Of a stretch of 64,000 bases of DNA, positions 1,510-64,000 are shown in pieces (the stretch's first letter is position 1; every line of letters starts with the position of its first letter). Source of the stretch: Epithemia pelagica (lineage: Eukaryota; Protista; Bacillariophyta). A program made the translations under genes and the position numbers. The notes under the pieces are model-generated. The model searched no databases. It saw only the letters and a program-made list of their open reading frames with translations, and was not told the DNA's origin. The stretch spans positions 2,356,001-2,420,000 of the forward strand of contig OX337240.1 in the NCBI GenBank assembly GCA_946965045.2, read 5' to 3'.

Positions 1510-3273
1510 TCAAAGGTTCTCGACGCCCAGAACACTTTTGATCGCCGTATGCCAGTCGTCATTCTTGGGAGAGGCAATGAAGATTCGTGTGTTCATCCAC
1601 ATTGTGGCAACATTCGCGGCCGGCATTAGGACATTGTTCTTGCTGTCCACAATCGGACTGCTGGTGTCTTCGCCCTTTGCCAGATACTTGTCTCGGTGAC
1701 GGCGTTCGTACGTGCTTTTGCACGCAGGATTCACAAACAGAATATTGAGTGTAGCTTCAAGCGGCAGATTTAATTTTTCCCGAAAGGATCGCAAAGTCCG
1801 GAGCTTGAAGGCATGAGATTGCTGCCATGTGGTCTGAAAGGCCCAGTATTCTTCGTTAATTACTAACACACAGTCGGCAAGAGGAAAGCTCAAGTCGCGG
1901 GGATAATTGACCATTTTCTCATGAAAGTTGTCTCGACTGATCTCTCGCTTGGTGTGTCCTAGGGTCTTCATTTCCGTGTCGGGTTCGCCATTTACACCTT
2001 TATACTGCCATATGACCTTCCCTGGCCCGGCCGCCAACATTTGAACAACAGATTCTTCCAGGTCCTTACCAGTATGATCTTTTGCCTCCCTCTTGAGGAC
2101 CTTTGCCAGCATCTTGAGATGTTCTTCAAAGGGAGTAAAGCTCATCACGTTCATTATTTTCTGCCGCACGTAGCGGCTCGTGAGGGTGAGGCCAGGCGAC
2201 CTGAAAGCCCGATCACCTTCCCACGAAATGTTGCTATAGGACAAAACGAATCCACTTATGTTTTCCTCCCAATTGGTAGTCGGATCATCGTCAATATCCA
2301 CCGTCATCGAACGTAACATATCAGCAGTAACTGCATTGCATCGTGTTTCCATTTTTTTCCGAAATTTGTCCCGATCTTCCTCTGTGGGGACCAGAGTATG
2401 TAAGAAAATCCCGCCAAATAGCTCAAAATTAGTTTCCAAAAAGTCCAAGTCCATCTTCTCTTCCTCGGCAATACACTCTAGTTCGCTGTATTCGGCGACA
2501 GGAGCATACAAGAAACGTAGTTCTTGCTTGCTGTATTCCTTGATCCGTTTCTTTCGTGGTGAAAGCGAGGCCAAACTTGGGGCTTCCGAAACCATGGGGG
2601 GCTGGTCAGTGAACTCCGAAGGTTCATAGAGGTAAAGAATATTACCATGATCACTAAGTAGAGTCTTGATTTCTCTGTCCGGACCAGTCAAAATGTATCC
2701 AGACGCAGCGTCCAGGTCCATGAGATAGAAATCTTTCCCCTCGTGACGGATAACAAACCGGTAAGGGCGATTCGACGACGATTCCACCAAAAGGCGACGC
2801 AGAATGAAGACCTGAAACCAAGATTTTCCAACCCCAGCATTACCTGTTAGAACAACCTTCTTTTCATTGTCATTTTTCCATATCTTCACCAAAACACTGT
2901 ACAAATAGTCGAAACACTCTCGCTCAAAGTAAAGATTTGAAGCTCTCCTCCGGAGATTGAGCACCTTTTTATCTGGGTAGTTCTCCAGCGAGAAGAGCGT
3001 GAGGCCACAGGCCCTCGCCTTGGGGGGTTGTGGATGCTTGGGCTCCAATTCCTTGAGGAACCCCAATTCACGCGTCAGCTTCCCAGAACGCTCCAACTGG
3101 AGACGACCCAACGCCTCTTTCACGTTTTCCGGGAAGAGGCATGTCTCTGGGGAAATCAACACCGAGCGCAACTGTGCACAACCATCAACATCGACATCCA
3201 TGGCAACAACGACAGGCTCAACGGAGAGAAAGACAAAATAAAGAATGCGAAGGTTGGTTCCGGTCCCAGTCAA
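1510..3273 (-). CDS. Crinkler (CRN)/RHS-like protein: P-loop NTPase plus C-terminal restriction-endonuclease-like domain
   Basis: Uninterrupted 587-aa ORF; likely ATG at 3201 (MDVDVDG). Motifs: YFERECFDYL, Walker A VLTGNAGVGKS, SLSPRKKRIKEY, FLYAPVAEYSEL, FELFGG, and C-terminal YPRDLSFPLADC...AFQTTWQQSH typical of CR NTPase+REase proteins. Confidence 0.75.
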   Translation of the reverse strand: MTGTGTNLRILYFVFLSVEPVVVAMDVDVDGCAQLRSVLISPETCLFPENVKEALGRLQLERSGKLTRELGFLKELEPKHPQPPKARACGLTLFSLENYPDKKVLNLRRRASNLYFERECFDYLYSVLVKIWKNDNEKKVVLTGNAGVGKSWFQVFILRRLLVESSSNRPYRFVIRHEGKDFYLMDLDAASGYILTGPDREIKTLLSDHGNILYLYEPSEFTDQPPMVSEAPSLASLSPRKKRIKEYSKQELRFLYAPVAEYSELECIAEEEKMDLDFLETNFELFGGIFLHTLVPTEEDRDKFRKKMETRCNAVTADMLRSMTVDIDDDPTTNWEENISGFVLSYSNISWEGDRAFRSPGLTLTSRYVRQKIMNVMSFTPFEEHLKMLAKVLKREAKDHTGKDLEESVVQMLAAGPGKVIWQYKGVNGEPDTEMKTLGHTKREISRDNFHEKMVNYPRDLSFPLADCVLVINEEYWAFQTTWQQSHAFKLRTLRSFREKLNLPLEATLNILFVNPACKSTYERRHRDKYLAKGEDTSSPIVDSKNNVLMPAANVATMWMNTRIFIASPKNDDWHTAIKSVLGVENL

Positions 3274-6356: not shown

Positions 6357-7991
6357 TACCCCCTAGCGGAAGGGTGAGTCCTGGTCGTGAATGAGAGAGG
6401 GAGCATTCTGATACTCACCCCCAAGGCGCGATTCTCAAAATTGGCGATTTTCCGACTTTGACCCAAACTCACAACTACCACAACGCAAACACCACGAGGC
6501 CCATCTTGCTGTGGTTGTAGCAGCACCCATGGACCCTCCGAAGTCCACCCGCGTTGTTCATCCTGTCTCTACCAACCCAAGGGACACTCCTGGCGTGGAA
6601 ACCAACCGTTCCGACCCGCTGCTTCCATTTAGATCTCAGTACAACGACAATGCAATGGGAAGCAACAACAACCCGAACGAAAACCATCCATCCGACGCCA
6701 TTATGCACCCGCCCAATCCGACCCAAGTTGTCGACCCTATCCCTACCCACCTCATGGGCCGTCCTGGCGTTGAAACGAACTGCTCGGACACTTCTACGGC
6801 TTCAAACCACCACCACCAATACGTTACAAACACCAACAACCACGGAACAGATGGACCTGCTCCCAAATGTGATCTGGATCCATTTGCTTCCGTTCGAATG
6901 CCTCCCGTGGTCCCTACCCCTTATTATCGTACGTCTAGAGCACAAATGGTGGCCATTGTCATGGGACAAGCGAGTTCATCAACATTATGGACCATGCAGA
7001 TGAATCGACACTGTTGGGTGGCGACAAAGCATCAATCAAACAAAAGCACCTCAAAACCTATTTCCCCGAAACAATTGGTGTCCCAGTGCCAGTACTTGGT
7101 GAACCATTCTACAGAGTACTTGTCTTATTTGGTGTCCCAGTGAACCATTCTACATGCCAAGACTATTTCTCAACAAATTTCAACCTTTGTTCAGTCCTTT
7201 TGTCGACTGTGTGAGAACCTTGCAACCGGATTGTATGTAATGGCCCCAGAATTCCGTACCCCAATGGATAGCTCCGTCTCCAAACTTTGAATGAGTCCAC
7301 CTTCCGGGTTTTGAGCACATTGTTTGGTTGAATCCTTTACATTATTGAGCAAATCATGACACTGCCCTTCCGCATCCAAAAACGTTGTGTCTTCTCCATC
7401 GTCCAAGGACTCACAAACCTCATTGATGAAGGACAGCCATTGTCCAATAGCTGTGAGCACTGAAATGGTAGTATCCAGTAAGGAAACATGAGTGTGCAAC
7501 GTTATACTACGTCTGCAGTGTAATCTCCGTTGTGAAAACCACCATCCTCGTCTCTGCTAGAATTCATCTCAGGGTCATCGGGGAGGTTGGGAGAGGGTGC
7601 ATCGACTGGAGGGGAACGGTCATTGCCAGGGACGGAGGATGGAGCAGCAGCAGTGGGTTCGGACAAGGAGCCTTGATTTTCGGCGATAATGGTGCCATGG
7701 TTGGCGGCTTCAATACTGCTTGCTATGGACGTTGCTTTCGTCTCTGTGTCGCCATAACATTCTCTAACATCACGTTGGGACCAACGGTGTCGCTTGTGTG
7801 ACGAAGAAGACTAGGAGGACGACATGGTAGTCTGTTGCACCTCCACCCTCCGTGGTGGATGCAGTGAATGTGTGTAATGAAATTTTGGGTTTGGGTCAAA
7901 GTTGGATGAGCGAGATCGAGCCTTGGGGGTGAGTATGAGAATGCCACCTTGAATCACGATCAACCTGGACTCACCCTTCCGCTAGGGGGTA
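6357..7991. mobile_element. Non-autonomous TIR element with 10-bp TSD (Mutator/MULE-like, Pack-MULE-like)
   Basis: 25-bp perfect TIRs TACCCCCTAGCGGAAGGGTGAGTCC (6357-6381, reverse complement at 7967-7991), flanked by the direct repeat CTCGTTCCCA at 6347-6356 and 7992-8001. Interior holds convergent, partly decayed ORFs (6511..7143+, 7191..7499-, 7723..7947-). Confidence 0.9.
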
Positions 7992-8670: not shown

Positions 8671-9909
8671 TCAACTTCCATATCCCGACGAATCTTGACC
8701 CACTTCCAGAGCGGATGCTTTTGCTGTAGAAGGCTCGTTGGTGGTAGTTGGAACGGTCGTCCATGTTGCATCGACACCACTGAAAGATTGTTGCTCCTCC
8801 TCGTCGTTCTCATAGGCTTGCTTGTACCATTCGACCGTTCTTCGAATGCCTTCTTCAAACGAAATGGAACTCTTGTAGCCCAACAAATGAGCAGCCTTGC
8901 CGACATCCGCACACGTGTACGGAACATCGCCTGGCTGATCGGGCAATACCTTGATTTGGGCATCCTTGCCAACATTGGACTGTACCAAGCCAATAAACTC
9001 CTTCAACGAGGTTCCACTGCCCTTGCCCAAATTGAAGATTTGATAGGGGTAGGGACGATCAATGGCTCGCACCACACCATTCACGATATCATCGATATAT
9101 GTGTAGTCACGACTACTGGATCCATCGCCAAATTGCTGAATCGTTTGACCTCGACTCACACGGTCAATAAACTTGAAGGGAGCCATGTCGGGTCGGCCGC
9201 GGGGACCATAGACAGTGAAGAATCGCAGCGCCGATACATTGAGTTTGTACAAGTGATGATAAGTGTACGCGAGTAATTCACAAGCCTTTTTGGAAGCGGC
9301 ATAGGGTGAGACAGGATTGTCCACCACCTCTTCTTCGGAAAACAGTGTCGACTTGGAGCCGCCATAGACGGAGGAAGAACTGGCAAAGACAAAGTTTTGA
9401 ATACCATACTTGGCCGACAACTCCATGAGACGCGTCGTTCCTTCAATATTGGAATGAATGTACACATAGGGGTCTTGAATGGATGGCCGTACACCGGCAC
9501 GAGCCGCCATGTGACACACCCATTGTGCTTGTTCCTCCTCAAAAATTGATGTCATGAGTTGAATATCACAAATATCACCCTTGAAGATCTTGAGTCTGTC
9601 ACTGCCATACTGTTGTTTCAAGAGGTGTAAGTTTTGCATTTTGATATTCACATCGTAGTAGTCATTCATTTCGTCCACGATGACAACATCATCACCTCGT
9701 TCAAGAAGGTAAGCAGCGACATGACTGCCAATGAAACCAGCACCACCAGTCACCAAGACTTTCTTATAGCCAGTGTGAGGCTCGACAGGTGTAAGACTTT
9801 CCCAAGAATTCCAGGATTCACTCTCCGAGTCGGATGTCGCGGTTGCCGTCGAAGCATCGGAAGAGAGGGTCGTCATGGTGCGATTTAGTTGCTCTTTGAG
9901 ATCAGACAT
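8671..9909 (-). CDS. GAE: UDP-glucuronate 4-epimerase (NAD-dependent epimerase/extended SDR), copy 1
   Basis: 412 aa; TGGAGFIGSH, HMAARAGVRPS, ASSSSVYG, YAASKK and FFTVYGPRGRPDMA, the signature of the GAE/CapI subfamily. Confidence 0.85.
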   Translation of the reverse strand: MSDLKEQLNRTMTTLSSDASTATATSDSESESWNSWESLTPVEPHTGYKKVLVTGGAGFIGSHVAAYLLERGDDVVIVDEMNDYYDVNIKMQNLHLLKQQYGSDRLKIFKGDICDIQLMTSIFEEEQAQWVCHMAARAGVRPSIQDPYVYIHSNIEGTTRLMELSAKYGIQNFVFASSSSVYGGSKSTLFSEEEVVDNPVSPYAASKKACELLAYTYHHLYKLNVSALRFFTVYGPRGRPDMAPFKFIDRVSRGQTIQQFGDGSSSRDYTYIDDIVNGVVRAIDRPYPYQIFNLGKGSGTSLKEFIGLVQSNVGKDAQIKVLPDQPGDVPYTCADVGKAAHLLGYKSSISFEEGIRRTVEWYKQAYENDEEEQQSFSGVDATWTTVPTTTNEPSTAKASALEVGQDSSGYGS

Positions 9910-10854: not shown

Positions 10855-12093
10855 ATGAACCCTCAAAAATCTCTTTCACGATCGGCTGCTTCCTCCGTCT
10901 CGTTGGCACCGACAGTTGCCTCCGAGACTGAAGCCGAGGCGGAATCCTGGGCATCGTGGGAAAGCATTTCACCTATTGAGCCTCATACTGGCTACAAAAA
11001 GGTCTTGGTGACTGGAGGTGCCGGTTTCATTGGTAGCCATGTCGCTGCTTACCTTCTCGAACGTGGTGACGATGTTGTCATTGTCGACGAAATCAATGAC
11101 TACTACGATGTGAATATCAAAATGCAAAACTTGCACCTCTTGAAACAACAGTATGGCAGTGACAGACTCAAGATCTTCAAGGGTGATATTTGTGATGTTC
11201 AACTCATGACATCAATTTTTGAGGAGGAACAAGCACAATGGGTGTGTCACATGGCGGCTCGTGCCGGTGTTCGACCATCCATTCAAGACCCCTATGTGTA
11301 CATTCATTCCAATATTGAAGGAACGACACGTCTCATGGAGCTGTCGGCCAAGTATGGTATTCAAAACTTTGTCTTTGCCAGTTCTTCCTCCGTCTATGGT
11401 GGCTCCAAGTCGACACTGTTTTCCGAAGAAGAGGTGGTGGACAATCCTGTCTCACCCTATGCCGCTTCCAAAAAGGCTTGTGAATTACTCGCGTACACGT
11501 ACCATCACTTGTACAAACTCAATGTATCGGCGCTGCGGTTTTTTACCGTCTATGGTCCCCGCGGCCGCCCGGACATGGCTCCCTTCAAGTTTATTGACCG
11601 TGTGAGTCGAGGTCAAACGATTCAGCAATTTGGCGATGGATCCAGCAGTCGTGACTACACATATATTGATGATATCGTGAATGGTGTGGTGCGAGCCATT
11701 GATCGTCCCTACCCCTATCAAATCTTCAATTTGGGCAAGGGCAGTGGAACCTCATTGAAGGAGTTTATTGGCTTGGTACAGTGCAATGTCGGCAAGGATG
11801 CCCAGATCAAGGTATTGCCCGATCAACCAGGCGATGTTCCGTACACGTGTGCGGATGTCGGCAAGGCTGCCCATTTGCTGGGCTACAAGAGTTCTATTTC
11901 GTTTGAAGAAGGCATTCGAAGAACTGTCGAATGGTACAAGGAAGCCTATCCGCAAGAACCCGTCGTATCGGAAAGCAGCATTGTGGAATCGACCTCGTCG
12001 GTAGACTTTAGCAATGGATACTTTGTCGTGGGAGAGCCATCGAAGGGACCACCCAAGCTCGGTTGGGAAGATTCCTCAGGGTACGGAAGTTAA
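10855..12093 (+). CDS. GAE: UDP-glucuronate 4-epimerase, copy 2 (inverted paralog)
   Basis: 412 aa with the same motifs; the catalytic core differs from copy 1 at three residues by my alignment (M/I, I/V, S/C). Confidence 0.85.
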   Translation: MNPQKSLSRSAASSVSLAPTVASETEAEAESWASWESISPIEPHTGYKKVLVTGGAGFIGSHVAAYLLERGDDVVIVDEINDYYDVNIKMQNLHLLKQQYGSDRLKIFKGDICDVQLMTSIFEEEQAQWVCHMAARAGVRPSIQDPYVYIHSNIEGTTRLMELSAKYGIQNFVFASSSSVYGGSKSTLFSEEEVVDNPVSPYAASKKACELLAYTYHHLYKLNVSALRFFTVYGPRGRPDMAPFKFIDRVSRGQTIQQFGDGSSSRDYTYIDDIVNGVVRAIDRPYPYQIFNLGKGSGTSLKEFIGLVQCNVGKDAQIKVLPDQPGDVPYTCADVGKAAHLLGYKSSISFEEGIRRTVEWYKEAYPQEPVVSESSIVESTSSVDFSNGYFVVGEPSKGPPKLGWEDSSGYGS

Positions 12094-18742: not shown

Positions 18743-18777
18743 ACAATGTCTCGCTCGCTCCGTTGTTGCCGCTTTCC

Positions 18778-19641
18778 CTCCGATTGCGGGGGTACCTCCC
18801 GTCTGCTGTCCATACGGTTATTCTCAAATTTTCCTAAAAAATGTTAAAATTATTTCTGTCAAATTTCTTTCGATCTAGCACATTATTATAACGTCCAAGC
18901 CAACTGTAATAACTGGCTTCGCCCTATTGTGTAGCCGCTTGCGCTCATGCATGACCGTGAGCCGTGAGACTTGACGAGACATGATGGACAAAGAAATCTA
19001 CTAGCCCATTTTGTACTCAATAGTCTATTGTTTCAGAAGCGAGTACTCTTTACGCAGTAGTGGATCTAGCTTCACGGAATCATCACACACACACACACAC
19101 ACACCAAACCATGAAATACACACACATGGTGCAATGCACCTCTAGAGGAGTATCAAAACAAGCTCCTGGCACTTTGTCTATGGGAAAGATAAAAGCATAG
19201 TCCACTGCTAGTTTAGGCTTCCTGCTTCCTGGGCTTACATACCCCATGATGACGCTGTCAACCAGTGCACTGGTTGATTGTTCATTGCACTGGTTGATTG
19301 TCATGTTTCATGTTGTCATCCTTCCTTTGATGCATTCCACCTTCACTTGTGATCTAGGTGGATGGTTTTGACCATAAGTTATCACTTTGGTCGTTCGTCC
19401 GGCTGGGTGGTTTTCTTTTGGTTTTTGGTGTGCTCAGTGCTCATGGTCGTCTTTTGTGGTGTTGCTCGAAAAGTGAGACGATTCTTGGCCCATGTGCCAG
19501 CAATACAAGGCGTGACCGGCGCGTCGATTTCGAACGATCGAAGGGAGGCTGGCGATATCACCCGGCTGGCGCTTTGGGAAAAAATACGAGACAATTTTTT
19601 TCCATTCGGATGACGGACGAACACAGGTACCCCCCCAATCG
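18778..19641. mobile_element. Non-autonomous derivative of the MULE at 22060..27943 (inverted relative to it)
   Basis: 18778-18810 is an exact 33-bp inverted copy of 27911-27943. 19590-19641 is an inverted match to 22060-22110 (cgattgggggggtacct.tgtt.gtccgtc.tcc). No TSD found. Confidence 0.7.
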
Positions 19642-19752
19642 CACCCTTTGTGAAGTGGATCCCACCAATCCTCCCAACGCAGTGCCACTCAGAGGAGTGG
19701 ATGTTTCTGGTATCTTTTAGGTCTACTCCCGAGATGTTCCTCAACAATATTA

Positions 19753-21057: not shown

Positions 21058-21555
21058 CTAGTCCCTATTGAGCAGCTGCACAAGTTTGCCAAGTACCATG
21101 ACGACAAGTACAGAAAACTCATTGATCTTGTCAATCGTGTTCTCAAGAGAACTTCCGACACTGTCAATCTTCGTTTCGATCCTGTCCATGTGGTTCTCTT
21201 CAAGAAACGTTGCGATCCTGTCCATCGTCTTTTCGAGTCTGTCCATCTTCTTTTCGATCCTATCCATCTTCTTCTCTTCCAAAAAAGTCTCGATCTTCTT
21301 TTCGATCCTGTCCATGTATTTTTCAATCCTATCCATGTGGTTCTCGTCCAAAAAATCCTCAATCCTGTCGCTGTTGATCTCCAGAAAATCCTCTACATTC
21401 GTCCCTACCCTGTCAATGTTGTTCTCAAGGGTAGTTGCGCATGTTTCAATCTTGTGCTCCAGAAACCTGCAAAACCTGTCGAACTTGCTCGCATCTCCTG
21501 GCTGCCAAAGCAACAACAAGAAGATTGACACCAAGGCGGCAATCGGTGTCTTCAT
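21058..21555 (-). CDS. Small secreted coiled-coil protein with 7/11-residue repeats
   Basis: ATG 21555; MKTPIAALVSIFLLLLWQPGDA signal peptide; repeats MDRIEKK and (I)xxFLEENHMDR; hydrophobic C-terminal segment. Confidence 0.65.
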   Translation of the reverse strand: MKTPIAALVSIFLLLLWQPGDASKFDRFCRFLEHKIETCATTLENNIDRVGTNVEDFLEINSDRIEDFLDENHMDRIEKYMDRIEKKIETFLEEKKMDRIEKKMDRLEKTMDRIATFLEENHMDRIETKIDSVGSSLENTIDKINEFSVLVVMVLGKLVQLLNRD

Positions 21556-22238
21556 GGTTTGTTTTCGGACGAGTCCAAACGAGCGATTGGCGCAAAGCAA
21601 AAAGCTGCATATAGCCGTACCGGTCGGGCAATGGGCAATGTGCCACAAAGGTTGAAAAAAAATGGAAAAGTGCAATTGAGCGGGTGTGACAGATAGGGGT
21701 GAATCGATGGATAGACCAAGGATCGGGGAACGTATCCATACTACCAATCTGTCTATCTATTACGGAAAAATCCCATATCATTCGTAGTATCCGTAAAAAC
21801 TCCAACGGTCGTGTCGAGTATACTCCTGGATCCTGGGACTTCTTACGTATGAGCGTTTGGTTCGATGTGCCAAAATCAACAAAGAATATGCTCTTCTCGG
21901 TTCGATGCCGCCCGCATGGATTCGATTCGATACAGATATCATTGCGGAGATCATGGAGGCGACACGAAAACTTGGAACAAAGTCTAGGTAGGTAGATACC
22001 GTCGATGGGGATAATAGGAGTAGGAAGGAAGATCTGTGATGCGTCTCCGAGCATGGGATCGATTGGGGGGGTACCTTTGTTTGTCCGTCGTCCAGGAAAA
22101 ATAAAATAGACAAAAACAAAATTCTTTTTCCATTCGCGCCGCCGTTGGAACGCATGCCCTCCTTTTCGCGCCAGCCTTTCTTTTTCAAATCTGATGCCAC
22201 TCACTTTTTTTGCGCAACACAACATTTCAACACTCACC

Positions 22239-25178
22239 ATGACAACACCAAGTACTGCTATTCAAGATGATGAGGTAGAACGTGATGACGGAAACAACCC
22301 GAGTCAATCATGGAAAGCGTCCTTGCTCTTTGACCATGTAGAGGGTTCTTGCCACCCAGTTGATTTATTCCAGTACACTGACAAAGAAAAGTACAAGAGA
22401 CGCCACACAACTTCCCAACCCCTGGTGATATTTGATAGAACTCGCTTTCAAAACACACCTGAAGGACTGAACTTGCTACTGTGTGAACTGAAGAAATCTG
22501 CTCTACTGGACGGTACAACTCTTATATCTAGGAAAGGTGGCATTGAGTTGCGATGCCATAGATGCCGAATTTACCAATCTCACAAAAAGTCTCCTACGAA
22601 TGACAATCATTTGCAGTTTGACGAGCATGGAAGAAAGAATGGTACACGCAAGCATGCATACCACAGAGACCGTGGATTTGCCCGTAATGGTGGAAGATCG
22701 TGTCCGCGGAACACAGCCACATGCCTGCCAATTTCGAAAGAAGAAAAATGCAATGTCTTTCTTCGGTTGGGCATACAAGAAGGAGAAAATGGCTTCATTT
22801 ATCTCAAACAAGGTTGTGGGAACTGCATCCATCCTAATCATCCACAGCCTTTCAGAGCGGAACTTGCTTTGCAAAAGCGTCACATTGGTATTTTGACGCA
22901 AACCTTGATACGGTCAGGTGGCAATGCAAATGTTGGGTCTACTTCTATGAGAAGTTTGATTCTAGAGCATCAAAGTGAACTGGTCTCCAAAGGGACTGTC
23001 CATCATATTCAGTTAGAGCCTGAGTTTCTTTCCAATGCACAGAGTGACAACAACATTGCAGCAAGCACAGCCGAGAAAATGGTATCCTGGTTGCGGGCGA
23101 AAGCAAATGATCCCACAGTGAACTTACATTATTGCTTTCTTACCTGCAGTAAAGATACAGGAGCTTTCCACAAACACTCAAAGGGTCGCTGTCCTAAGCA
23201 AGGCCGAATGCCATTGTCAGACATAGAGAACGCAATGTCTCTTACTCCATCTTACAAACTGGAATGTGTCTTTTGCAAAGCTCGTGACAAGGAAATAAAC
23301 ACTCCACTTTGTGAGGGTCCTGCCATTGATAATGACCTTGTATCTTCTGCACGACAACACATTTCTGGAGCTGACCGAATCTTGTTAGGGGCTGCCTGGG
23401 TAGATGATGCAAACTACCAGCAATTCTTGAGGTTCCCTGAGGTTCTCTTTATAGACTCGACACACAAGACCAATAACGAAGCCAGACCGCTTCTGTTACT
23501 TTGTGGCCGAGATCAAAATGGAAAAGCCTTTGTAGTGGCTAGAATATTCATGCCAAATGAGACAATTGCTTTCTACAGGTGGGTATTTCTGAAATGCCTT
23601 CCATCTCTTTTGGGAACAGAGGCGATGCTCCGTGTAAGGCTTCTCATTACAGATGGGGATTCACAAGAATTTGATGCTGCACAAGAGGCTTGTCTGCATT
23701 TTTTCAAGAATGCTGCCAGGTGCAGATGCATGTTCCATCTTGTTCAAAAATCAGTTCAAAGGCACATTGCTCCCAGTGCTTTCCACACACCGCTTACAAA
23801 ACAGCACCTCCAGAAAGTCAAGTCTTGGGTATATAGTTGGGCTGATGGTTCAAGTTGCTTCACTGAACGACAGTACATTTTTTCAAAGGAGCTGCTTTTG
23901 CACAGGTTGCAAACTGATGATAAGATCCGAAAGGATGTACCTCTGGCCTCCATCACTGCAGTTATTGAGTGGCTGAACACAAAAGTCTTCCCGCACGAGA
24001 ACTCTTTTTGTTTTTGGAAAAAAACATACTTGAGGTGCTTAGACGAATACATGAACAATTCAGTAGAGGCAATGAACAAGTCGTGCAAGAAATCAGGTGT
24101 GTGTGCAAAGCCAAACATGAACATGGACAAAGCAGCTAATGCCATGCTTACGTACACGGAGTTGCAGTCGAGAATGAGGAGGAGCACCGAAGCCAGGAAA
24201 CTTTGCCAGACCCCCATTTTCTTGGATCCTTCAATACACAATGTTTCGATTCTGCGGCAACTTTGTGATCTTGGTCAACATTTGATGGTGAATCAGTTTC
24301 AACACCGGGTCAACTACTCTGTCCTTTGTACATCACCAACATCCTTTTTGGTGCTGTTGCACAATAAGAGAGACACATGTGCTTCAACTCTAGAACCACC
24401 TCGCTACAAGACAGCATGGGAAGTTCAAAAAGATGAAAAGGGATGGTTGAGATGCAAATGTGGTTATTCCCACCGGTATGGAATCCCGTGCAGGCATCTG
24501 CTTGCAGTGGAGCCCAAATATGATTTGCTTGACATTGATTCCCGCTGGCTAAGATGGTATGGATACTTTGCATATCATCCAGGTCGACCAAATGATGGCA
24601 ATGATTGTTTTCATGAGAGCACAGGAATCAGGCACAAAACAGACTTGGCGATTGAAAGACGATTTCCATTCCCACTTCCTGGTTGTCAACTCTCTGCTAA
24701 CCAATTTCTTGCTGTTTCCGACAGTTCTCACCTTCATTGTTGGAACTACAATGTAGCTGATTATCCACAGAAACACCGGGGATTAGCTATTGAAAGTGGT
24801 AGTCCCGAGCTTAGTGGTAGTCCCGAGCCATCTTGTCAGATGTTTACCCAGGAGTCTACAGCACCAGATATGACTGAAGGAAATACTATACCACAGCAAG
24901 AAGAGATATTGACTTTCTCTGCACCAATTCCCAGAACAGTGTCTCAAGCTCAAGTGCATACTTTCTTCAAGGACATGTTGCCATTGTTTAACTGCCCCTC
25001 GTCTCGAAAGCGTCTATATGAAAAGCTGGAAGAAGAGCGGGACAATCAAGAGACTAGGCTTCGAGAAAAACAACCAAAGATTGGTGATAGACAGAATGAG
25101 GTCTCATTTGTGTCAAGTAATGTTCCATTTGACAAATCCCGTGAATCGATCCAAAATACTTACCACTTTAAGAACTAG
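22239..25178 (+). CDS. MULE transposase with N-terminal Zn-finger and SWIM domain
   Basis: Uninterrupted ORF (994 aa from 22194; first ATG 22239). FPEVLFIDSTHKTN, LITDGD, CMFHL, NNSVEAMN (putative D-D-E); SWIM CKCGYSHRYGIPCRH; N-terminal C..C..H..H cluster. Confidence 0.92.
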   Translation: MTTPSTAIQDDEVERDDGNNPSQSWKASLLFDHVEGSCHPVDLFQYTDKEKYKRRHTTSQPLVIFDRTRFQNTPEGLNLLLCELKKSALLDGTTLISRKGGIELRCHRCRIYQSHKKSPTNDNHLQFDEHGRKNGTRKHAYHRDRGFARNGGRSCPRNTATCLPISKEEKCNVFLRLGIQEGENGFIYLKQGCGNCIHPNHPQPFRAELALQKRHIGILTQTLIRSGGNANVGSTSMRSLILEHQSELVSKGTVHHIQLEPEFLSNAQSDNNIAASTAEKMVSWLRAKANDPTVNLHYCFLTCSKDTGAFHKHSKGRCPKQGRMPLSDIENAMSLTPSYKLECVFCKARDKEINTPLCEGPAIDNDLVSSARQHISGADRILLGAAWVDDANYQQFLRFPEVLFIDSTHKTNNEARPLLLLCGRDQNGKAFVVARIFMPNETIAFYRWVFLKCLPSLLGTEAMLRVRLLITDGDSQEFDAAQEACLHFFKNAARCRCMFHLVQKSVQRHIAPSAFHTPLTKQHLQKVKSWVYSWADGSSCFTERQYIFSKELLLHRLQTDDKIRKDVPLASITAVIEWLNTKVFPHENSFCFWKKTYLRCLDEYMNNSVEAMNKSCKKSGVCAKPNMNMDKAANAMLTYTELQSRMRRSTEARKLCQTPIFLDPSIHNVSILRQLCDLGQHLMVNQFQHRVNYSVLCTSPTSFLVLLHNKRDTCASTLEPPRYKTAWEVQKDEKGWLRCKCGYSHRYGIPCRHLLAVEPKYDLLDIDSRWLRWYGYFAYHPGRPNDGNDCFHESTGIRHKTDLAIERRFPFPLPGCQLSANQFLAVSDSSHLHCWNYNVADYPQKHRGLAIESGSPELSGSPEPSCQMFTQESTAPDMTEGNTIPQQEEILTFSAPIPRTVSQAQVHTFFKDMLPLFNCPSSRKRLYEKLEEERDNQETRLREKQPKIGDRQNEVSFVSSNVPFDKSRESIQNTYHFKN

Positions 25179-25193
25179 AAAGAACTGACTTGT

Positions 25194-26753
25194 TTAATTA
25201 TCCAGTATTGCAAATGCAAAATGCTTCAATCCATACCCACCTCGCCCAATGCATGGGGATTTTTCAAAATTGACAAGGACTCGACGAGCTTCCAAATGAG
25301 ATGATCTATTTCTGAACACATCTCGATGGAGTCCGACAGGGTGTTGCACCATGGTCCAAGAACTATTTGTTGCCAATTTCCTGATCACTTTCTTGTATTC
25401 AAAGTTACAGGAGTTGCCGGTGTCTTGTCCTTCTTTGATTTCTGTTTGTACAGCCGTTGGGGCAATGTCAATTCCAATCTGTTGGGAAACCTGTGCCAAC
25501 AAATGAGCTGCAAAAAGTTTCATTTCCACAACTTGGTCAAAAATTGGATATGTCTCGGCATCAGATGAGCATACTTTGAATTGACCTCCTTTCTTTGGAG
25601 TGCTGTATGTATGCTTGACCATGCAATTCTTCTTCCTTGACCGATAGATGCAAACCCACTGCAGCTTCTCTCGGAATAGTTTTACTCCTCCTGCTTTCCT
25701 GGGAAAAGAGCCTGGTATGGAAAGGAACTGGAAGAACTCTTTGTTCAACTCTGTTGTTCCAGAACTGCCACCTCTGCGCATGCATTCGAAGCCTGAATGA
25801 GAAAGTTTCTTACATATTGTGTTGTAGAGTTGTTTCATTTTCATGGGTGTCATTTCCATGGTTTCTTTATAGTTGTTGTGGAAGCAAAACAGCAGCAAGG
25901 GCATCATGTGGTCAATGTTGTGTGGTCGTCCAAGCACAATACTGGCTTCTGCATTGTTGTTGTGTTGGAAGAGAGTGGCATCCTCTATCTGCTTCATTGT
26001 CAGGTCATTCTCTCCTTTCTTACTTAACTGACAGCCAGAACTCTGTTGGTCAAATATATAGATGTCGACAATATATCCTTCAGGCTCATGTATTCCTATC
26101 TCTGGAATCTCATCCATTACTGCAAATAGTTGCTGTTTGGAGTATTTGTTTGACTGCAACGACATTGGTTGTGGAGTGGCATTCTTCTCCTCAGCTAACA
26201 GCACTGTTTTGAGACTGGGAACACAATGCCAGACACCATCAAATGCACCTGTCTCTCTTCCCAGACCATGAATATCGAGAAAGCTTGTGTTGTTGTTTGG
26301 TGAATCAATAAAGAGATTGTATTGTGGGAAAAACAAACATCCATCCAATAGTTTCTGATCACTGGCTGATACTCTGTCAGCGGCGAGTTTGATTTGTTGT
26401 TGTAAATTTTGTCGCTGTACACCAGCCTCTTTCATCAGATTCCTTGTAAGTCTGTGCTCACAACAGGATCCAATAAAAGTGGAGGCTGCTTCAGTCATTT
26501 TGCTGTCAACAAACTGAGCAGCAGTCCTAAGCCATTTGTCCTCCTGGATTCCCTTTTTTTTGCAGAGGTCCACAATTTCTGACACACATCTGAAACAAGC
26601 CTTGCATCCACATCTAGAGCATGTCAGAAACTGTGGTGTTGGCTTTGTTGTTGCTGTTTCTTGCAATGGTTGTATTGGTTTGATTGATTGCTGTTGTTTT
26701 CTTTCAACTGAATTTGGGGAACAAAAAAGGCAACTCATGGTTCCAATGAACAT
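25194..26753 (-). CDS. MULE accessory protein: Cys-rich PHD/ADD-like finger plus C-terminal HxD motif
   Basis: Intact 519-aa ORF converging on the transposase (stop codons 15 bp apart). CLFC...LTCSRCGCKACFRCV...CCEH at the N-terminus; QHPVGLHRDVF near the C-terminus. Confidence 0.7.
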   Translation of the reverse strand: MFIGTMSCLFCSPNSVERKQQQSIKPIQPLQETATTKPTPQFLTCSRCGCKACFRCVSEIVDLCKKKGIQEDKWLRTAAQFVDSKMTEAASTFIGSCCEHRLTRNLMKEAGVQRQNLQQQIKLAADRVSASDQKLLDGCLFFPQYNLFIDSPNNNTSFLDIHGLGRETGAFDGVWHCVPSLKTVLLAEEKNATPQPMSLQSNKYSKQQLFAVMDEIPEIGIHEPEGYIVDIYIFDQQSSGCQLSKKGENDLTMKQIEDATLFQHNNNAEASIVLGRPHNIDHMMPLLLFCFHNNYKETMEMTPMKMKQLYNTICKKLSHSGFECMRRGGSSGTTELNKEFFQFLSIPGSFPRKAGGVKLFREKLQWVCIYRSRKKNCMVKHTYSTPKKGGQFKVCSSDAETYPIFDQVVEMKLFAAHLLAQVSQQIGIDIAPTAVQTEIKEGQDTGNSCNFEYKKVIRKLATNSSWTMVQHPVGLHRDVFRNRSSHLEARRVLVNFEKSPCIGRGGYGLKHFAFAILDN

Positions 26754-26925
26754 TCATGAACAGGGGGCTCAATGACACCTTTCCTCTCAATACAAAGGAA
26801 GACAGCAACTGCCCTGACAAATGGATGAAGACACCCTTGTCCTCAAGACAGTATAGAACTTCCTGGCACCAGGAAATAGATGCAGAGAACCCTCTATCAC
26901 TCAATTCTTTGGAGTTCCAGGTTGG

Positions 26926-27586
26926 CTTTTTATTTTTTGCCCAAGGAAGCTTTGGGGTTCACCGATTCACAATGGCCGATAGCGCGTCGGAAAGTAGACT
27001 CAAAGACGGTTCCAAGGAAAAAAGGTTGACTCAAATCCCACCAGTAGATGTGGAGATCTGGTGTGGACAACACAAGGCTTGAAAACAGATCCTGGACGAC
27101 TTTTTATTTTTTGGCCCAAGGAAGCTTTGGGGTTCACCGATTCACAATGGGCAGTATTGCATCAGAAAGTAGACTCAAAGACGGTTCCAAGGAAAAAAGG
27201 TTGACTCAAATCCCACCAGTAGATGTGGAGATCTGGTGTGGACAACACAAGGCTTGAAAACAGATCCTGGACGACTTTTTATTTTTTGGCCCAAGGAAGC
27301 TTTGGGGTTCACCGATTCACAATGGCCGATAGCGCGTCGGAAAGTAGACTCAAAGACGGTTCCAAGGAAAAAAGGTTGACTCAAATCCCACCAGTAGATG
27401 TGGAGATCTGGTGTGGACAACACAAGGCTTGAAAACAGATCCTGGACGACTTTTTATTTTTTGGCCCAAGGAAGCTTTGGCTTGCACCGATTCACAATGG
27501 GCAGTATTGCATCAGAAAGTAGACTCAAAGACGGTTCCAAGGGAAAAAGGTTGACTCAAATCCCACCATTAGATGTGGAGATATGG
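26926..27586. repeat. 175-bp tandem array (~3.8 units) with alternating A/B variants
   Basis: ccaaggaagc at 26941, 27116, 27291 and 27466 (exact 175-bp spacing). Units 1 and 3 carry ccgatagcgcgtcgg; units 2 and 4 carry gcagtattgcatcag. Confidence 0.97.
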
Positions 27587-27661
27587 TCTTTCCAGTCTGT
27601 GTGCTGGATTGTGATGACCAAGTTCTGAATGACCGGTGGAGGAGTAGCGTATGGATGGTCA

Positions 27662-27789
27662 ACAGGTGGGAGTATCCAAAGGTTTTGTCATAGGGTCATT
27701 AGGGATAGGGTATAAATGGCCCACAGGTGGGAGCATCAAAAGGATTTGTCGTAGGGTCATTAGGGATAGGGTATAAATGGCCCACAGGT
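27662..27789. repeat. 61-bp subterminal tandem repeat x2
   Basis: acaggtggg...tagggtcattagggatagggtataaatggccc starts at 27662 and 27723; partial third copy at 27784. Confidence 0.9.
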
Positions 27790-28082
27790 TAACTGTGGTT
27801 CGGGGGAGGTCTGTTTGACCGTTATATCCAATTATTAAATCTAGAAAAATAAAAAAGTTACTGTAAAAATCCAAATGATATTTTTTTAAAAATTTGGATA
27901 TTAGCGTGTAGACAGCAGACGGGAGGTACCCCCGCAATCGGAGAGATTTAGCATAAGCGAATACCACCTTTCCTCCCCCTCCTTTTTGACGGGGGGGCTC
28001 GAAAAGGGGCGGGATCCATGACTATGTACGTCCGCCGTCCGTGCAAAGGAGAAAAGATCTCAACAACAAGTAACACGGATCT

Positions 28083-50787: not shown

Positions 50788-51813
50788 TTACAATCGGTAT
50801 CCGTCCGAGCCCTTGCCTTTGCCCTTGGCGCTATCACCGCCTTTGCCCTTGCTCATGGGACTGCCGGATCCCTTGCCTTTGCTCTTGGGACTGTAGGTTC
50901 CTTTGCCCTTACCCTTGCCCTTGCCCATCATGTAGTCGTCGTCGTAGTCAGAGCCTTTCTTGCCTTTGCCATCGCTGTCGGATCCCTTGCCCTTGCCCAT
51001 CATGTAGTCGTCGTCGTAGTCAGAGCCTTTCTTGCCTTTGCCATCGCTGTCGGATCCCTTGCCCTTGCCCTTGCCCATCATGTAGTCGTCGTCGTAGTCA
51101 GAGCCTTTCTTGCCTTTGCCATCGCTGTCGGATCCCTTGCCCTTGCCCATCATGTAATCGTCATCATAGTCGTATTCTTTTTTGCCTTTTCCCTTGCCCT
51201 TGCCCTTGCCCTTTCCCTTTCCCATCATGAAATCATCATCGTAATCAGATTCCTTCTTTCCCTTGCCTTTTCCTTTGCCCATCGCGTAGTCATCGTCGTA
51301 CATGTCGTATTCGTACACGTACTCGCAAAATTCCCATTCAAAAATTGGAATGGTCTCATCTGGTTGACCAGCTGAGACGGAGCCCATTACTCCCATGAAA
51401 GAACCTGACCCTCCGGTAATGACGTTTGGGCCACCAACATCGGAGAAACCAAACGAAGCAGATATCCAACTCTGAGGATCTTCCAACAATCCAAAGTTCC
51501 ATGTACCGGAAGAAGTTGCGTCCATGAAGAACCCATAGACACGTCCCAGTGGAACGGGCGATTCACCCATGTACGCTTGCATGGCTTCGTCAAAGGTGTC
51601 AAAAATAGGGGCATCGAAAGAAGTAAAGCCATTGTCTTAAGGAATGACTCCGGCATACGAAACACCACCATAGGTTCCCCCGACACCATACTCGTAAACG
51701 GATGAACATTCCAAGACGAGGTCATCGTCCTCGTAACCGTCCTCGTGGACTGCAAGGGCGAAAGGAGCCATGACGGCGACTGTACCGAGGAACAAGGCAA
51801 GGTCAAACTTCAT
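50788..51813 (-). CDS. Secreted protein with dirigent/AOC-like domain and GK/DY-rich repeats; in-frame TAA at 51637-51639
   Basis: ATG 51813; MKFDLALFLGTVAVMAPFALA signal; NVITGGSGSFMGVMGSV motif; repeats of DYDDDYMMGKGKGSDSDGKGKKGS. The frame is continuous across one TAA. Confidence 0.7.
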
Positions 51814-63954: not shown

Positions 63955-64000
63955 GAATTCCTTGCCCTCGTCATCGATCTTGGCAAACAGGTTCTCTGCG

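What the first reader, a model, noticed from the sequence alone, without database searches (positions are those of the whole stretch)
22060..27943. Diatom MULE carrying a putative chromatin-acting accessory gene plus a tandem array: candidate transposon-encoded anti-silencing system
Seen: intact DDE/SWIM transposase; a convergent intact 519-aa ORF; a 175-bp ABAB array and 61-bp repeats directly upstream of that ORF, inside the element end. Established: Arabidopsis VANDAL MULEs encode VANC proteins that recognise tandemly expanded motifs in their own non-coding DNA and remove silencing; fungal KDZ transposons carry TET/JBP dioxygenases; diatoms methylate transposons at CG. Inference: this three-part layout could be an independently evolved anti-silencing module, which I do not know to be described in diatoms. 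The alternative is a mudrB-like integration helper.
Basis: inference. Interest (0 to 1): 0.85.

Follow-up and report, generated by a model that had tools for sequence, protein, structure and literature searches.

The report
Two-gene Mutator transposon with repeat array
This is a young Mutator-type jumping gene that carries a second, uncharacterised gene and a 175-bp repeat array; relatives keep the same three-part layout, but nothing here shows that it fights silencing.

Summary
Window 22055-27946 is a 5.9-kb MULE whose ends are fixed by two further copies and a 0.87-kb mini-copy. It has a 994-aa MULE/SWIM transposase, a tail-to-tail 519-aa ORF2, a 175-bp x 3.8 ABAB array 172 bp upstream of ORF2, and a 61-bp x 2.2 repeat.

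The layout is conserved. Three more MULE lineages of the same assembly (transposases 40-57% identical) carry arrays of 179 bp x 34, 180 bp x 23.5 and 177 bp x 7.4 at the 5' end of a convergent second gene. Their monomers share no sequence.

ORF2 is not a recent host capture. Its profile finds 495 protein clusters, and distant homologs again sit convergent to MULE-type transposases. Its model is confident (pLDDT 90.6) but matches no solved fold.

The anti-silencing reading is untested and weakened:
- ORF2 shows no VANC or TET/JBP homology.
- Two of the arrays accompany an unrelated second gene.
- The element is CpG-depleted (0.45 against 0.89 for the rest of the window).

Most likely this is a MuDR-like two-gene MULE whose array is the second gene's control region. 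It is a new variant of a known kind, of moderate interest. "Diatom" could not be verified.

The parts
22055..27946 (+). Complete autonomous MULE copy (5.89 kb)
   Evidence: The limits are set by where similarity to L006 (98.8%), L001 and the in-window mini-copy stops. The flanks are unrelated.
22060..22076 (+). Left terminal inverted repeat core (17 nt). It is preceded by 5 near-constant bases, GGGWK, at 22055-22059.
   Evidence: (pair I7).
22194..25178 (+). Transposase, 994 aa: MULE DDE core, RNaseH-like domain and C-terminal SWIM zinc finger
25194..26753 (-). ORF2, 519 aa, the convergent accessory gene. It has an N-terminal Cys-rich zinc module (C8, C11, C45, C48, C53, C56, C97, C98, D160, H162, H176). 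It also has a conserved enzyme-like alpha/beta domain with near-invariant E323, R326, G328-G329-S330, R352, Y370, Y383, K412, H476, D478, E488, R504 and D518. This copy carries a derived R290C change.
26754..26925 (-). 172-bp spacer between the ORF2 start codon and the array; presumed core promoter and 5' UTR (inferred)
   Evidence: Coordinates.
26926..27587 (.). 175-bp tandem array, 3.8 copies, with ABAB higher-order structure
   Evidence: (family D1). The same array is present in L001 and L006.
27655..27789 (.). 61-bp tandem repeat, 2.2 copies
   Evidence: family D5. Also present in L001 and L006.
27924..27940 (-). Right terminal inverted repeat core (17 nt). It is followed by 6 near-constant bases, GAGRGW, at 27941-27946.
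18775..19646 (-). Non-autonomous 0.87-kb derivative of the same family. It keeps both termini and has no ORF and no array.

Best explanation
This is a young, low-copy, structurally complete Mutator-like element organised like maize MuDR, with two convergent genes between short inverted repeats. Gene 1 is the DDE/SWIM transposase.

Gene 2 (ORF2) belongs to a large, unnamed protein family that is a long-standing partner of MULE-type transposases. So far it has been found in eukaryote-like contigs and marine or aquatic metagenomes. It combines a Cys-rich zinc module with a conserved enzyme-like domain. I infer that it is an element-dedicated helper acting on DNA or chromatin during or around transposition. 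That makes it a positional analogue of mudrB; its chemistry is unknown.

The 175-bp array, and the 177-180-bp arrays of sister lineages, is the 5' control region of the second gene. It is a stack of repeated promoter or upstream-activating units, and possibly a binding platform for an element-encoded protein. Its unit length is held near one nucleosome repeat.

Shown: the anatomy, its conservation, the family membership of ORF2, and the recurrent linkage of ORF2 to MULE transposases. Inferred: the promoter or platform role of the array, the helper role of ORF2, and the nucleosome-length constraint.
For: - Transposase domains.
- Copies with unrelated flanks, a deletion derivative and a mini-copy show recent mobility.
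- The two stops are 15 bp apart here. The gap is under 160 bp in most related loci (L002, L003, L021, L028, L032, L036, L051) and about 400 bp in L004.
- ORF2 homologs are next to MULE transposases in L001, L002 and L006.
- The ORF2 profile finds 495 clusters (237 below 1e-10).
- In metagenome loci the ORF2 homolog is again convergent with a 1040-1180-aa ORF. For the L028 and L032 groups that ORF aligns to the MULE catalytic core (hhalign probability 91.7%, E 8e-7).
- No relative was found in viral or prokaryotic contig collections.
- Arrays of 179 bp x 34, 180 bp x 23.5 and 177 bp x 7.4 begin 4-190 bp from the 5' end of the second gene. In L002 and L003 they lie inside the inverted repeats.
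- In L003 the array starts 4 bp from the start codon, so the promoter must lie within the monomers.
- No other 170-185-bp array was seen in the roughly 190 kb sampled from this assembly.
Against: - No transcript data are available, so the promoter role is inferred from position alone.
- L005 has a related transposase but no array. The metagenomic MULE-plus-ORF2 loci show no array of about 177 bp. The array is therefore not indispensable.
- The helper role of ORF2 is by analogy with MuDR. No homology to MURB was or could be tested.
- All three larger copies carry a blemish in ORF2: R290C in the window, a 1-bp deletion in L006, and a 1757-bp deletion in L001. None is known to be active.
- The 8-11-bp target-site duplication expected of MULEs is absent.
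Confidence: 0.5

Rival explanations
1. ORF2 is a sequence-specific anti-silencing factor that binds its own tandem array and removes or blocks CG methylation or repressive chromatin on the element. This would be an independent analogue of VANDAL VANC, or of the TET/JBP genes carried by fungal KDZ transposons.
For: - Each lineage has its own array sequence next to its own diverged second gene. This is the pattern expected from protein-target co-evolution, as described for VANC (PMC5735166).
- ORF2 has a zinc module that could bind DNA and an enzyme-like domain with an invariant HxD.
- The best non-trivial fold match is a Sylvanvirus protein annotated as a JBP1/TET oxygenase (probability 0.82, E 0.017, TM 0.28).
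- One distant ORF2 homolog (L036) sits beside an ORF with a sub-threshold Plavaka (KDZ-type) transposase hit (E 0.0011).
Against: - No DUF1985 or Tet_JBP hit in ORF2 or in 81 relatives.
- No TET, JBP, AlkB or other double-stranded beta-helix structure among the PDB matches (best E 0.07, TM about 0.1).
- Only 41 residues follow the HxD, and there is no conserved distal His.
- Arrays of about 177 bp also accompany the unrelated family B gene.
- The monomers share no motif of 6 nt or more and have only 2-3 internal repeats of any 6-8-mer.
- CpG observed/expected is 0.45 for the element, 0.27 for ORF2 and 0.19-0.32 for the sister arrays, against 0.89 for the rest of the window.
- 17 of 79 substitutions between copies are CpG transitions, although CpG sites make up 4.6% of the bases. 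The family therefore appears to have been methylated for a long time.
Confidence: 0.12
2. The arrays have no function for the element. They are satellite-like expansions of subterminal DNA, produced by slippage, unequal exchange or faulty gap repair, and they settle near nucleosome length as many TE-borne satellites do. The period is shared only by descent. ORF2 is simply a helper or passenger gene.
For: - Satellite-like arrays with monomers near 170 bp carried inside transposons are documented, for example in Tribolium (PMC4675708) and in oyster Helentrons (PMC7492417).
- Copy number varies widely, from 3.8 to 34.
- L005 and the metagenomic relatives lack such arrays.
- The arrays are the most CpG-depleted part of the sister elements.
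Against: - The arrays are always in the same place, between the 5' end of the second gene and the inverted repeat.
- They were kept while the transposases diverged to 40-57% identity and the monomer sequence turned over completely, yet the period stayed within 175-180 bp.
- In L003 the array abuts the start codon, so it cannot be irrelevant to that gene's expression.
Confidence: 0.28
3. ORF2 is a host gene recently captured by this MULE (Pack-MULE style) and has no role in the element.
For: - MULEs are known to capture host genes (PMC6446971).
- Several distant ORF2 homologs (L010-L019, L021, L036) have no demonstrable MULE neighbour.
Against: - ORF2 is full-length and conserved at 47% identity in the sister lineage L002, in the same position and orientation.
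- Homologs at 25-30% identity are again convergent with MULE-type transposases in metagenomic lineages.
- The many fragmentary, multi-copy hits are typical of transposon genes.
Confidence: 0.05

Closest known systems
Maize MuDR (mudrA transposase with convergent mudrB helper)
   Same: Both have a Mutator-superfamily DDE transposase and a second gene transcribed convergently from the other end of the element, between inverted repeats. In both, the second gene is lineage-restricted and of unclear biochemistry. (The MuDR anatomy is from my own knowledge; the mudrA/mudrB summary is in PMC6446971.)
   Different: The inverted repeat here is only 17 nt, against about 215 bp in MuDR. There is no target-site duplication. 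The second gene is preceded by a 175-bp tandem array. ORF2 belongs to a large family spread over many marine lineages, whereas mudrB is confined to Zea. Homology to MURB was not tested.
Arabidopsis VANDAL21/Hiun (VANA transposase, VANB, VANC anti-silencing factor)
   Same: Both are MULEs with extra element-specific genes and tandem repeats in their non-coding DNA. In both, the repeats differ between sublineages (PMC5735166).
   Different: ORF2 shows no detectable homology to VANC. VANC targets are 8-9-nt motifs at high density in short repeats in introns and upstream regions. Here the units are 175-180 bp with no dense short motif. Loss of methylation is demonstrated for VANC and untested here, and the CpG decay argues that the element is methylated.
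Repbase 'MULE-Diatoms' group and the mobile Phaeodactylum tricornutum MULE
   Same: These are SWIM-type MULE transposases from stramenopiles. The Repbase group is tabulated as 'No TSD' (PMC6446971), which matches this element. The P. tricornutum element also carries a second, diatom-restricted zinc-finger ORF (bioRxiv 10.1101/2023.01.02.522487).
   Different: The Repbase group is listed with one ORF and 123-124-bp inverted repeats. The P. tricornutum element is 3.7 kb with inverted repeats of about 200 bp and 9-bp duplications. Its second ORF is annotated as a UBR-type E3 ligase, and no tandem array is reported. Sequence relatedness to either was not tested, because no sequences were to hand.
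Fungal KDZ transposons carrying TET/JBP dioxygenases
   Same: Both show the logic of a DNA transposon that keeps a dedicated enzyme-like passenger gene across lineages. ORF2 has an HxD motif and a weak fold match to a protein annotated JBP1/TET.
   Different: ORF2 has no Tet_JBP domain, no solved double-stranded beta-helix neighbour and no distal His or Arg in the canonical order. The partner transposase is MULE-type, not KDZ.
Monomer arrays in the mouse LINE-1 5' UTR, and satellite-like arrays carried by transposons (Helentrons, Tribolium)
   Same: All are head-to-tail units of about 170-210 bp at the 5' side of an element's gene. The sequence turns over between subfamilies while the unit length is kept. 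(The mouse L1 comparison is from my own knowledge; the TE-borne satellites are PMC7492417 and PMC4675708.)
   Different: These belong to different transposon classes. Promoter activity is proven for L1 monomers and only inferred here.

Membership tests
Mutator-like element (MULE) | DDE transposase with the MULE catalytic domain | tested here: met
   PF10551 at 1.5e-14 (54.7 bits, cut-off 27.6) and ZSWIM1-3 RNaseH-like at 1.2e-8. The invariant D421, D487/D489, E625 and C512/H515 are present.
Mutator-like element (MULE) | C-terminal SWIM or CCHC zinc finger | tested here: met
   PF04434 SWIM, 20.8 bits against a cut-off of 19.6, at residues 753-772.
Mutator-like element (MULE) | Terminal inverted repeats, usually long | tested here: met
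   A 17-nt repeat with one mismatch sits at the ends defined by four copies. It is short for a MULE. Sister lineages have 45-nt (L003) and about 320-bp (L002) repeats.
Mutator-like element (MULE) | Target-site duplication of 8-11 bp | tested here: not met
   No shared string of 6 nt or more flanks any of the four young copies or L002 and L003. The literature lists Repbase diatom MULEs as 'No TSD' (PMC6446971).
Mutator-like element (MULE) | Several copies at unrelated sites, with deletion derivatives | tested here: met
   The window copy, L006 (98.8% identical), L001 (1757-bp internal deletion) and a 0.87-kb mini-copy all have unrelated flanks.
MuDR-type two-gene MULE | Second gene convergent with the transposase, between the inverted repeats | tested here: met
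   The stops are 15 bp apart. The same arrangement is seen in L002, L003, L004, L007, L051 and the L028/L032 groups.
MuDR-type two-gene MULE | Second gene homologous to mudrB | not tested
   No MURB sequence or profile was available from the tools. Pfam gave no hit of any kind.
VANDAL/VANC anti-silencing system | VANC-type protein (DUF1985-containing) | tested here: not met
   ORF2 has no Pfam family at E up to 1. DUF1985 is not among the families listed for the 81 relatives, although the call shows only the top 25 of 27.
VANDAL/VANC anti-silencing system | Short binding motif arrayed at high density, in one orientation, in the element's non-coding DNA | tested here: inconclusive
   Tandem repeats are present. 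Any 6-8-mer occurs only 2-3 times per monomer, which is borderline against shuffles. No motif of 6 nt or more is shared between lineages.
VANDAL/VANC anti-silencing system | Expression causes sequence-specific loss of DNA methylation and derepression | not testable with these tools
   This needs methylome and expression data. Indirectly, CpG observed/expected is 0.45 against 0.89, and the copies decay with a bias to CpG transitions. That indicates the family is methylated.
TET/JBP 2OG-Fe(II) dioxygenase passenger (as in KDZ transposons) | Tet_JBP domain detectable by profile | tested here: not met
   Tet_JBP is not among the families listed for ORF2 or the 81 relatives at E up to 1; the call shows the top 25 of 27 families.
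TET/JBP 2OG-Fe(II) dioxygenase passenger (as in KDZ transposons) | HxD ... H ... R iron and 2-oxoglutarate triad in canonical order | tested here: not met
   H476-x-D478 is invariant, but the protein ends 41 residues later and has no conserved His in between.
TET/JBP 2OG-Fe(II) dioxygenase passenger (as in KDZ transposons) | Double-stranded beta-helix fold | tested here: inconclusive
   No TET, JBP or AlkB chain appears among the 50 PDB matches shown (best E 0.07). There is one weak match to a Sylvanvirus protein annotated JBP1/TET (E 0.017, probability 0.82, TM 0.28 and 0.21). The aligned region could not be inspected.
Transposon-borne satellite-like array | Head-to-tail homogenised monomers of about 150-200 bp inside a transposon | tested here: met
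   175 bp x 3.8 (94% matches), 179 x 34 (97%), 180 x 23.5 (95%) and 177 x 7.4 (98%).

The most novel reading that the evidence does not exclude
ORF2 may found a new class of transposon-encoded DNA- or chromatin-modifying enzymes: a zinc module plus a fold with no solved relative. Such an enzyme would be recruited to nucleosome-length arrays that each MULE lineage renews for itself. This would be an independently evolved self-recognition or anti-silencing module in marine protists, functionally parallel to VANC in VANDALs or to TET/JBP in KDZ elements.
Probability: 0.12. Interest if true: 0.85.

Novelty: new variant of a known kind. Interest (0 to 1): 0.5.

Why it matters
Two-gene MULEs are known, but what the second gene does is understood in only one case (VANC). 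This locus offers three things.

- A large, unnamed family of second genes. It has a confident predicted structure, no solved relative, and a clear set of invariant, catalytic-looking residues. It recurs beside MULE-type transposases in distant lineages.
- A natural series of sister elements. Array sequence, array copy number (3.8 to 34) and even the identity of the second gene vary, while position and unit length (175-180 bp) stay fixed.
- Near-identical copies with an open, a frameshifted and a deleted ORF2 in one genome.

Together these make it directly testable whether transposon-borne arrays act as promoters, protein landing pads or nucleosome-phasing devices in an organism that appears to methylate CG in its transposons. 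If the answer is only 'promoter', the finding is a tidy annotation. If ORF2 acts on chromatin, it would be a second, independent example of a transposon counter-silencing system.

Tried and rejected
- TET/JBP identity for ORF2. This was prompted by the HPVGxHxD motif and the Sylvanvirus fold match. I rejected it as a membership claim.
- PD-(D/E)xK nuclease reading of D478-x9-E488-x-K490. The model places D478 in a long loop rather than at a beta-hairpin. The nuclease matches (Cas4 SSO0001, UL24, phage PD-(D/E)XK) have E of 0.7-0.9. Not supported.
- Homology between accessory families A and B. BLASTP, HMM and hhalign all gave nothing.
- Structure of family B. Only 3 sequences were available, because the last protein search found no further relatives. 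The model failed at pLDDT 32, so no fold search was run.
- Shared sequence or motif among the four arrays. None was found. The marginal window-L002 score (z = 3) is below the highest shuffled score.
- Target-site duplication at several candidate boundaries. None was found.
- Known RNA families in the element. None was found.
- ORF2 relatives in viral and prokaryotic contig collections. None was found.
- NCBIfam and PHROGs scans. Nothing was found.
- The nature of the 1130-aa and 378-aa ORFs linked to ORF2 homologs in L010, L016 and L041. No Pfam or PDB hit, and not MULE by hhalign.
- Organism identity. Cluster look-ups returned no accession numbers or organism names. The window's other genes (proteasome subunit, Tam41, epimerases) show only that this is a eukaryotic nuclear genome. 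'Diatom' remains unverified. Copia-type elements and a guanylate-cyclase/phosphodiesterase gene in L004 are compatible with a diatom, from my own knowledge.
It worked with a 10-sequence alignment.

Full report
**1. What is there.**
- ORF1 (22194-25178, +, 994 aa) is an uninterrupted transposase with MULE, ZSWIM1-3 RNaseH-like and SWIM domains.
- ORF2 (25194-26753, -, 519 aa) is convergent. Its stop lies 15 bp from the ORF1 stop.
- A 175-bp array of 3.8 units (26926-27587) begins 172 bp upstream of the ORF2 start. A 61-bp repeat of 2.2 units (27655-27789) follows.
- The array has true ABAB structure. The A/B difference is a 14-bp patch in which B lacks a cluster of four CpGs.

**2. Boundaries and mobility.** The 17-nt inverted repeat at 22060-22076 and 27924-27940 would not be convincing alone. 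Other copies fix the ends.
- L006 is a full-length copy, 98.8% identical over exactly window 22055-27943.
- L001 is the same element with a 1757-bp deletion that removes the 3' ends of both genes.
- A 0.87-kb mini-copy lies in the window itself at 18775-19646, in reverse orientation, and shares both termini.
- The flanks of the four copies are unrelated, so these are separate insertions.
- No target-site duplication is detectable at any of them, nor at two older relatives. The 5-6 bases just outside the 17-nt repeat are nearly constant (GGGWK ... GAGRGW).
- A published survey tabulates the Repbase diatom MULE group as 'No TSD' (PMC6446971), so this oddity has precedent.

**3. The layout is conserved.** All transposase relatives with long contigs come from one ENA assembly (ERZ21939226), as do the two ORF2 relatives found by the first protein search.

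| Locus | Transposase identity to window | Convergent second gene | Array at that gene's 5' end | Inverted repeats |
|---|---|---|---|---|
| L002 | 51-57% | ORF2 homolog, 47% identical | 179 bp x 34 (6.1 kb) | about 320 bp |
| L003 | 43% | 750-aa gene | 180 bp x 23.5, starting 4 bp from its start codon | 45 nt |
| L004 | about 41% | 390-aa gene | 177 bp x 7.4, 111 bp upstream | none found |
| L005 | 49% | unrelated ORF | none | none clear |

Sources for the table are.
- In the window element, L002 and L003 the array lies inside the inverted repeats.
- The four monomer consensus sequences share no detectable similarity and no common word of 6 nt or more.
- The second genes fall into two families. 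Family A covers the window and L002. Family B covers L003 and L004, which are 36% identical to each other, plus a relative in L007. BLASTP, HMM and hhalign find no homology between A and B.
- A further metagenomic relative (L051) has a third, unrelated convergent 1009-aa gene preceded by clusters of an 18-bp repeat.
- The constant features of this MULE clade are therefore a convergent second-gene slot and repeats at that gene's 5' end. In the one genome sampled in depth, the repeat period is held at 175-180 bp while everything else turns over.
- No other array with a 170-185-bp period occurs in the roughly 190 kb sampled from the assembly.

**4. What ORF2 is.**
- ORF2 has no Pfam, NCBIfam, PHROGs or PDB sequence match.
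- A profile of ORF2 and its L002 homolog finds 495 protein clusters at E up to 1e-3 and 237 at 1e-10. Almost all are unnamed and come from metagenomes. Some are fused to long N-terminal extensions that carry no known domain.
- The family has an N-terminal cysteine-rich module: CxxC ... CxxC-x4-CxxC ... CC, plus D160, H162 and H176. It has weak B-box, IBR and PHD affinities.
- It also has a large domain with near-invariant polar residues: E323, R326, G-G-S 328-330, R352, Y370, Y383, K412, H476-x-D478, E488, R504 and D518. This pattern looks enzymatic.
- AlphaFold2 with an 81-sequence alignment gives a confident model (pLDDT 90.6, pTM 0.89).
- Foldseek finds no solved structure (best E 0.07, TM about 0.1). 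Against the viral library there are only two weak matches, one to a Sylvanvirus protein annotated JBP1/TET (E 0.017, probability 0.82, TM 0.28).
- I tested the TET/JBP idea and do not file ORF2 there. No member hits Tet_JBP. The HxD lies 41 residues from the C-terminus with no conserved distal His. No double-stranded beta-helix structure was recovered.

**5. Is ORF2 a captured host gene?** No.
- Besides L002, metagenome loci with ORF2 homologs (25-30% identical) repeatedly show the homolog convergent with an ORF of 1040-1180 aa.
- For two such groups (L028-31, and L032-34 with L033 and L040) that ORF aligns to the MULE catalytic core by profile-profile comparison (probability 91.7%, E 8e-7). 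It also carries a SWIM-like stretch.
- Other homologs sit beside large ORFs that are not demonstrably MULE. L036 has C2H2 fingers and a sub-threshold Plavaka hit. L021 has an ORF of unknown type. The L010, L016 and L041 group has a conserved pair of ORFs with no known relatives.
- No relative was found in viral or prokaryotic collections.
- ORF2 is therefore an old transposon-associated gene, and it may partner more than one kind of transposase.

**6. State of the copies and the methylation signature.**
- The element is strongly CpG-depleted. Observed/expected is 0.45 overall and 0.27 in ORF2, against 0.89 for the rest of the window and 1.0 for the neighbouring proteasome gene. TpG and CpA are in excess.
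- The sister arrays are the most depleted parts, at 0.19-0.32.
- Among 79 substitutions separating the three larger copies, 17 are C>T or G>A at CpG, although CpG sites make up 4.6% of the bases.
- This is the footprint expected if the family is CG-methylated.
- The window copy is the only one of the three with both reading frames open. Its ORF2 carries a derived R290C, caused by a C>T change at a CpG, at a residue that is Arg in 67 of 74 relatives. L006 has a 1-bp deletion at codon 322, and L001 has the internal deletion.

**7. Interpretation.**
- The arrays always abut the 5' end of the second gene, and in L003 they reach its start codon. The most economical reading is that the monomers are that gene's repeated promoter or upstream region. 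They may also be a landing pad for an element protein.
- The unit length is constrained near one nucleosome repeat, much as mouse L1 5' monomers are (my own knowledge).
- A neutral satellite-like origin cannot be excluded (PMC4675708, PMC7492417). It fits the fixed position and period poorly.
- The VANC-like anti-silencing idea keeps one attraction: lineage-specific repeats sit next to a lineage-specific gene (PMC5735166). It has no homology support. It is weakened because the same kind of array serves an unrelated gene, and it sits uneasily with the CpG decay. I put it at about 0.12.

**8. Novelty and limits.**
- Second genes in diatom MULEs have been reported. A P. tricornutum element has a UBR-type zinc-finger ORF (bioRxiv 10.1101/2023.01.02.522487). 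Two-gene MULEs are classical.
- In the literature searched, I found no description of three things: this second-gene family, its recurrent linkage to MULE-type transposases, and the conserved arrays of about 177 bp.
- This is a new variant of a known kind, of moderate interest. There is a small chance of something more if ORF2 proves to act on chromatin.
- The organism could not be identified with the tools, so 'diatom' is unverified.
- No expression, methylation or binding data were available.
- The census rests on a handful of loci from one assembly plus short metagenome contigs.

Noticed in passing
window 18775-19646 (reverse orientation): A 0.87-kb non-autonomous derivative of the same MULE family. 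It keeps both termini (34 and 67 bp of similarity), has no ORF and no array, and lies 2.4 kb from the full copy.
   Followed up: yes
window 22055-22059 and 27941-27946; also L006, L001, L002 and L003 ends: No target-site duplication at any copy. The bases just outside the 17-nt inverted repeat are nearly constant (GGGWK / GAGRGW). This suggests either extra terminal bases or a purine-rich target preference.
   Followed up: partly
window 8671-9909 (-) and 10855-12093 (+): A head-to-head pair of 412-aa NAD-dependent epimerase/dehydratase genes with almost identical Pfam profiles. It looks like an inverted local duplication.
   Followed up: no
window 21058-21747 (-): A 229-aa ORF whose middle is built from 21- and 69-bp coding repeats (MDRIEK-like units). 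It lies immediately left of the MULE.
   Followed up: no
window 50905-51267: A tandem repeat with periods of 72-78 and 150 bp (2.4-3.8 copies), rich in CCCTTG units. It is probably a coding repeat on the minus strand.
   Followed up: no
window 61842-63999 (-): ORFs similar to the Copia-type (RVT_2) polyprotein of L003 1-3441. This is a retrotransposon fragment at the window edge.
   Followed up: no
L006 9746-9802 and 16316-16372 (approximate): The 98.8%-identical MULE copy lies between 57-nt inverted repeats (93% complementary). It seems to have inserted into another inverted-repeat element.
   Followed up: no
L010 8297-12820, L016 5000-9582, L041 617-5627: ORF2 homologs are linked to a conserved pair of ORFs with no known relatives (about 1130 aa and about 378 aa; 46-52% identical between L010 and L016). 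They have no Pfam or PDB match and are not MULE by hhalign. This may be an unrecognised kind of mobile element.
   Followed up: partly
L051 859-7500: A metagenomic MULE (transposase 39% identical) with a third, unrelated convergent 1009-aa gene. Clusters of an 18-bp repeat in both orientations lie upstream of that gene (7117-7428).
   Followed up: partly
L021 749-1414: A distant ORF2 homolog (1574-3166, +) is preceded by fresh tandem duplications (118 bp x 2.0 and 211 bp x 1.9, 97-100% identical). It is followed by a convergent 1055-aa ORF of unknown type.
   Followed up: no
L002 3173-3226 and 15615-15654: A 20-bp subterminal repeat (2-2.7 copies) sits inside both arms of the roughly 320-bp inverted repeat. 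It is a candidate transposase-binding site.
   Followed up: no
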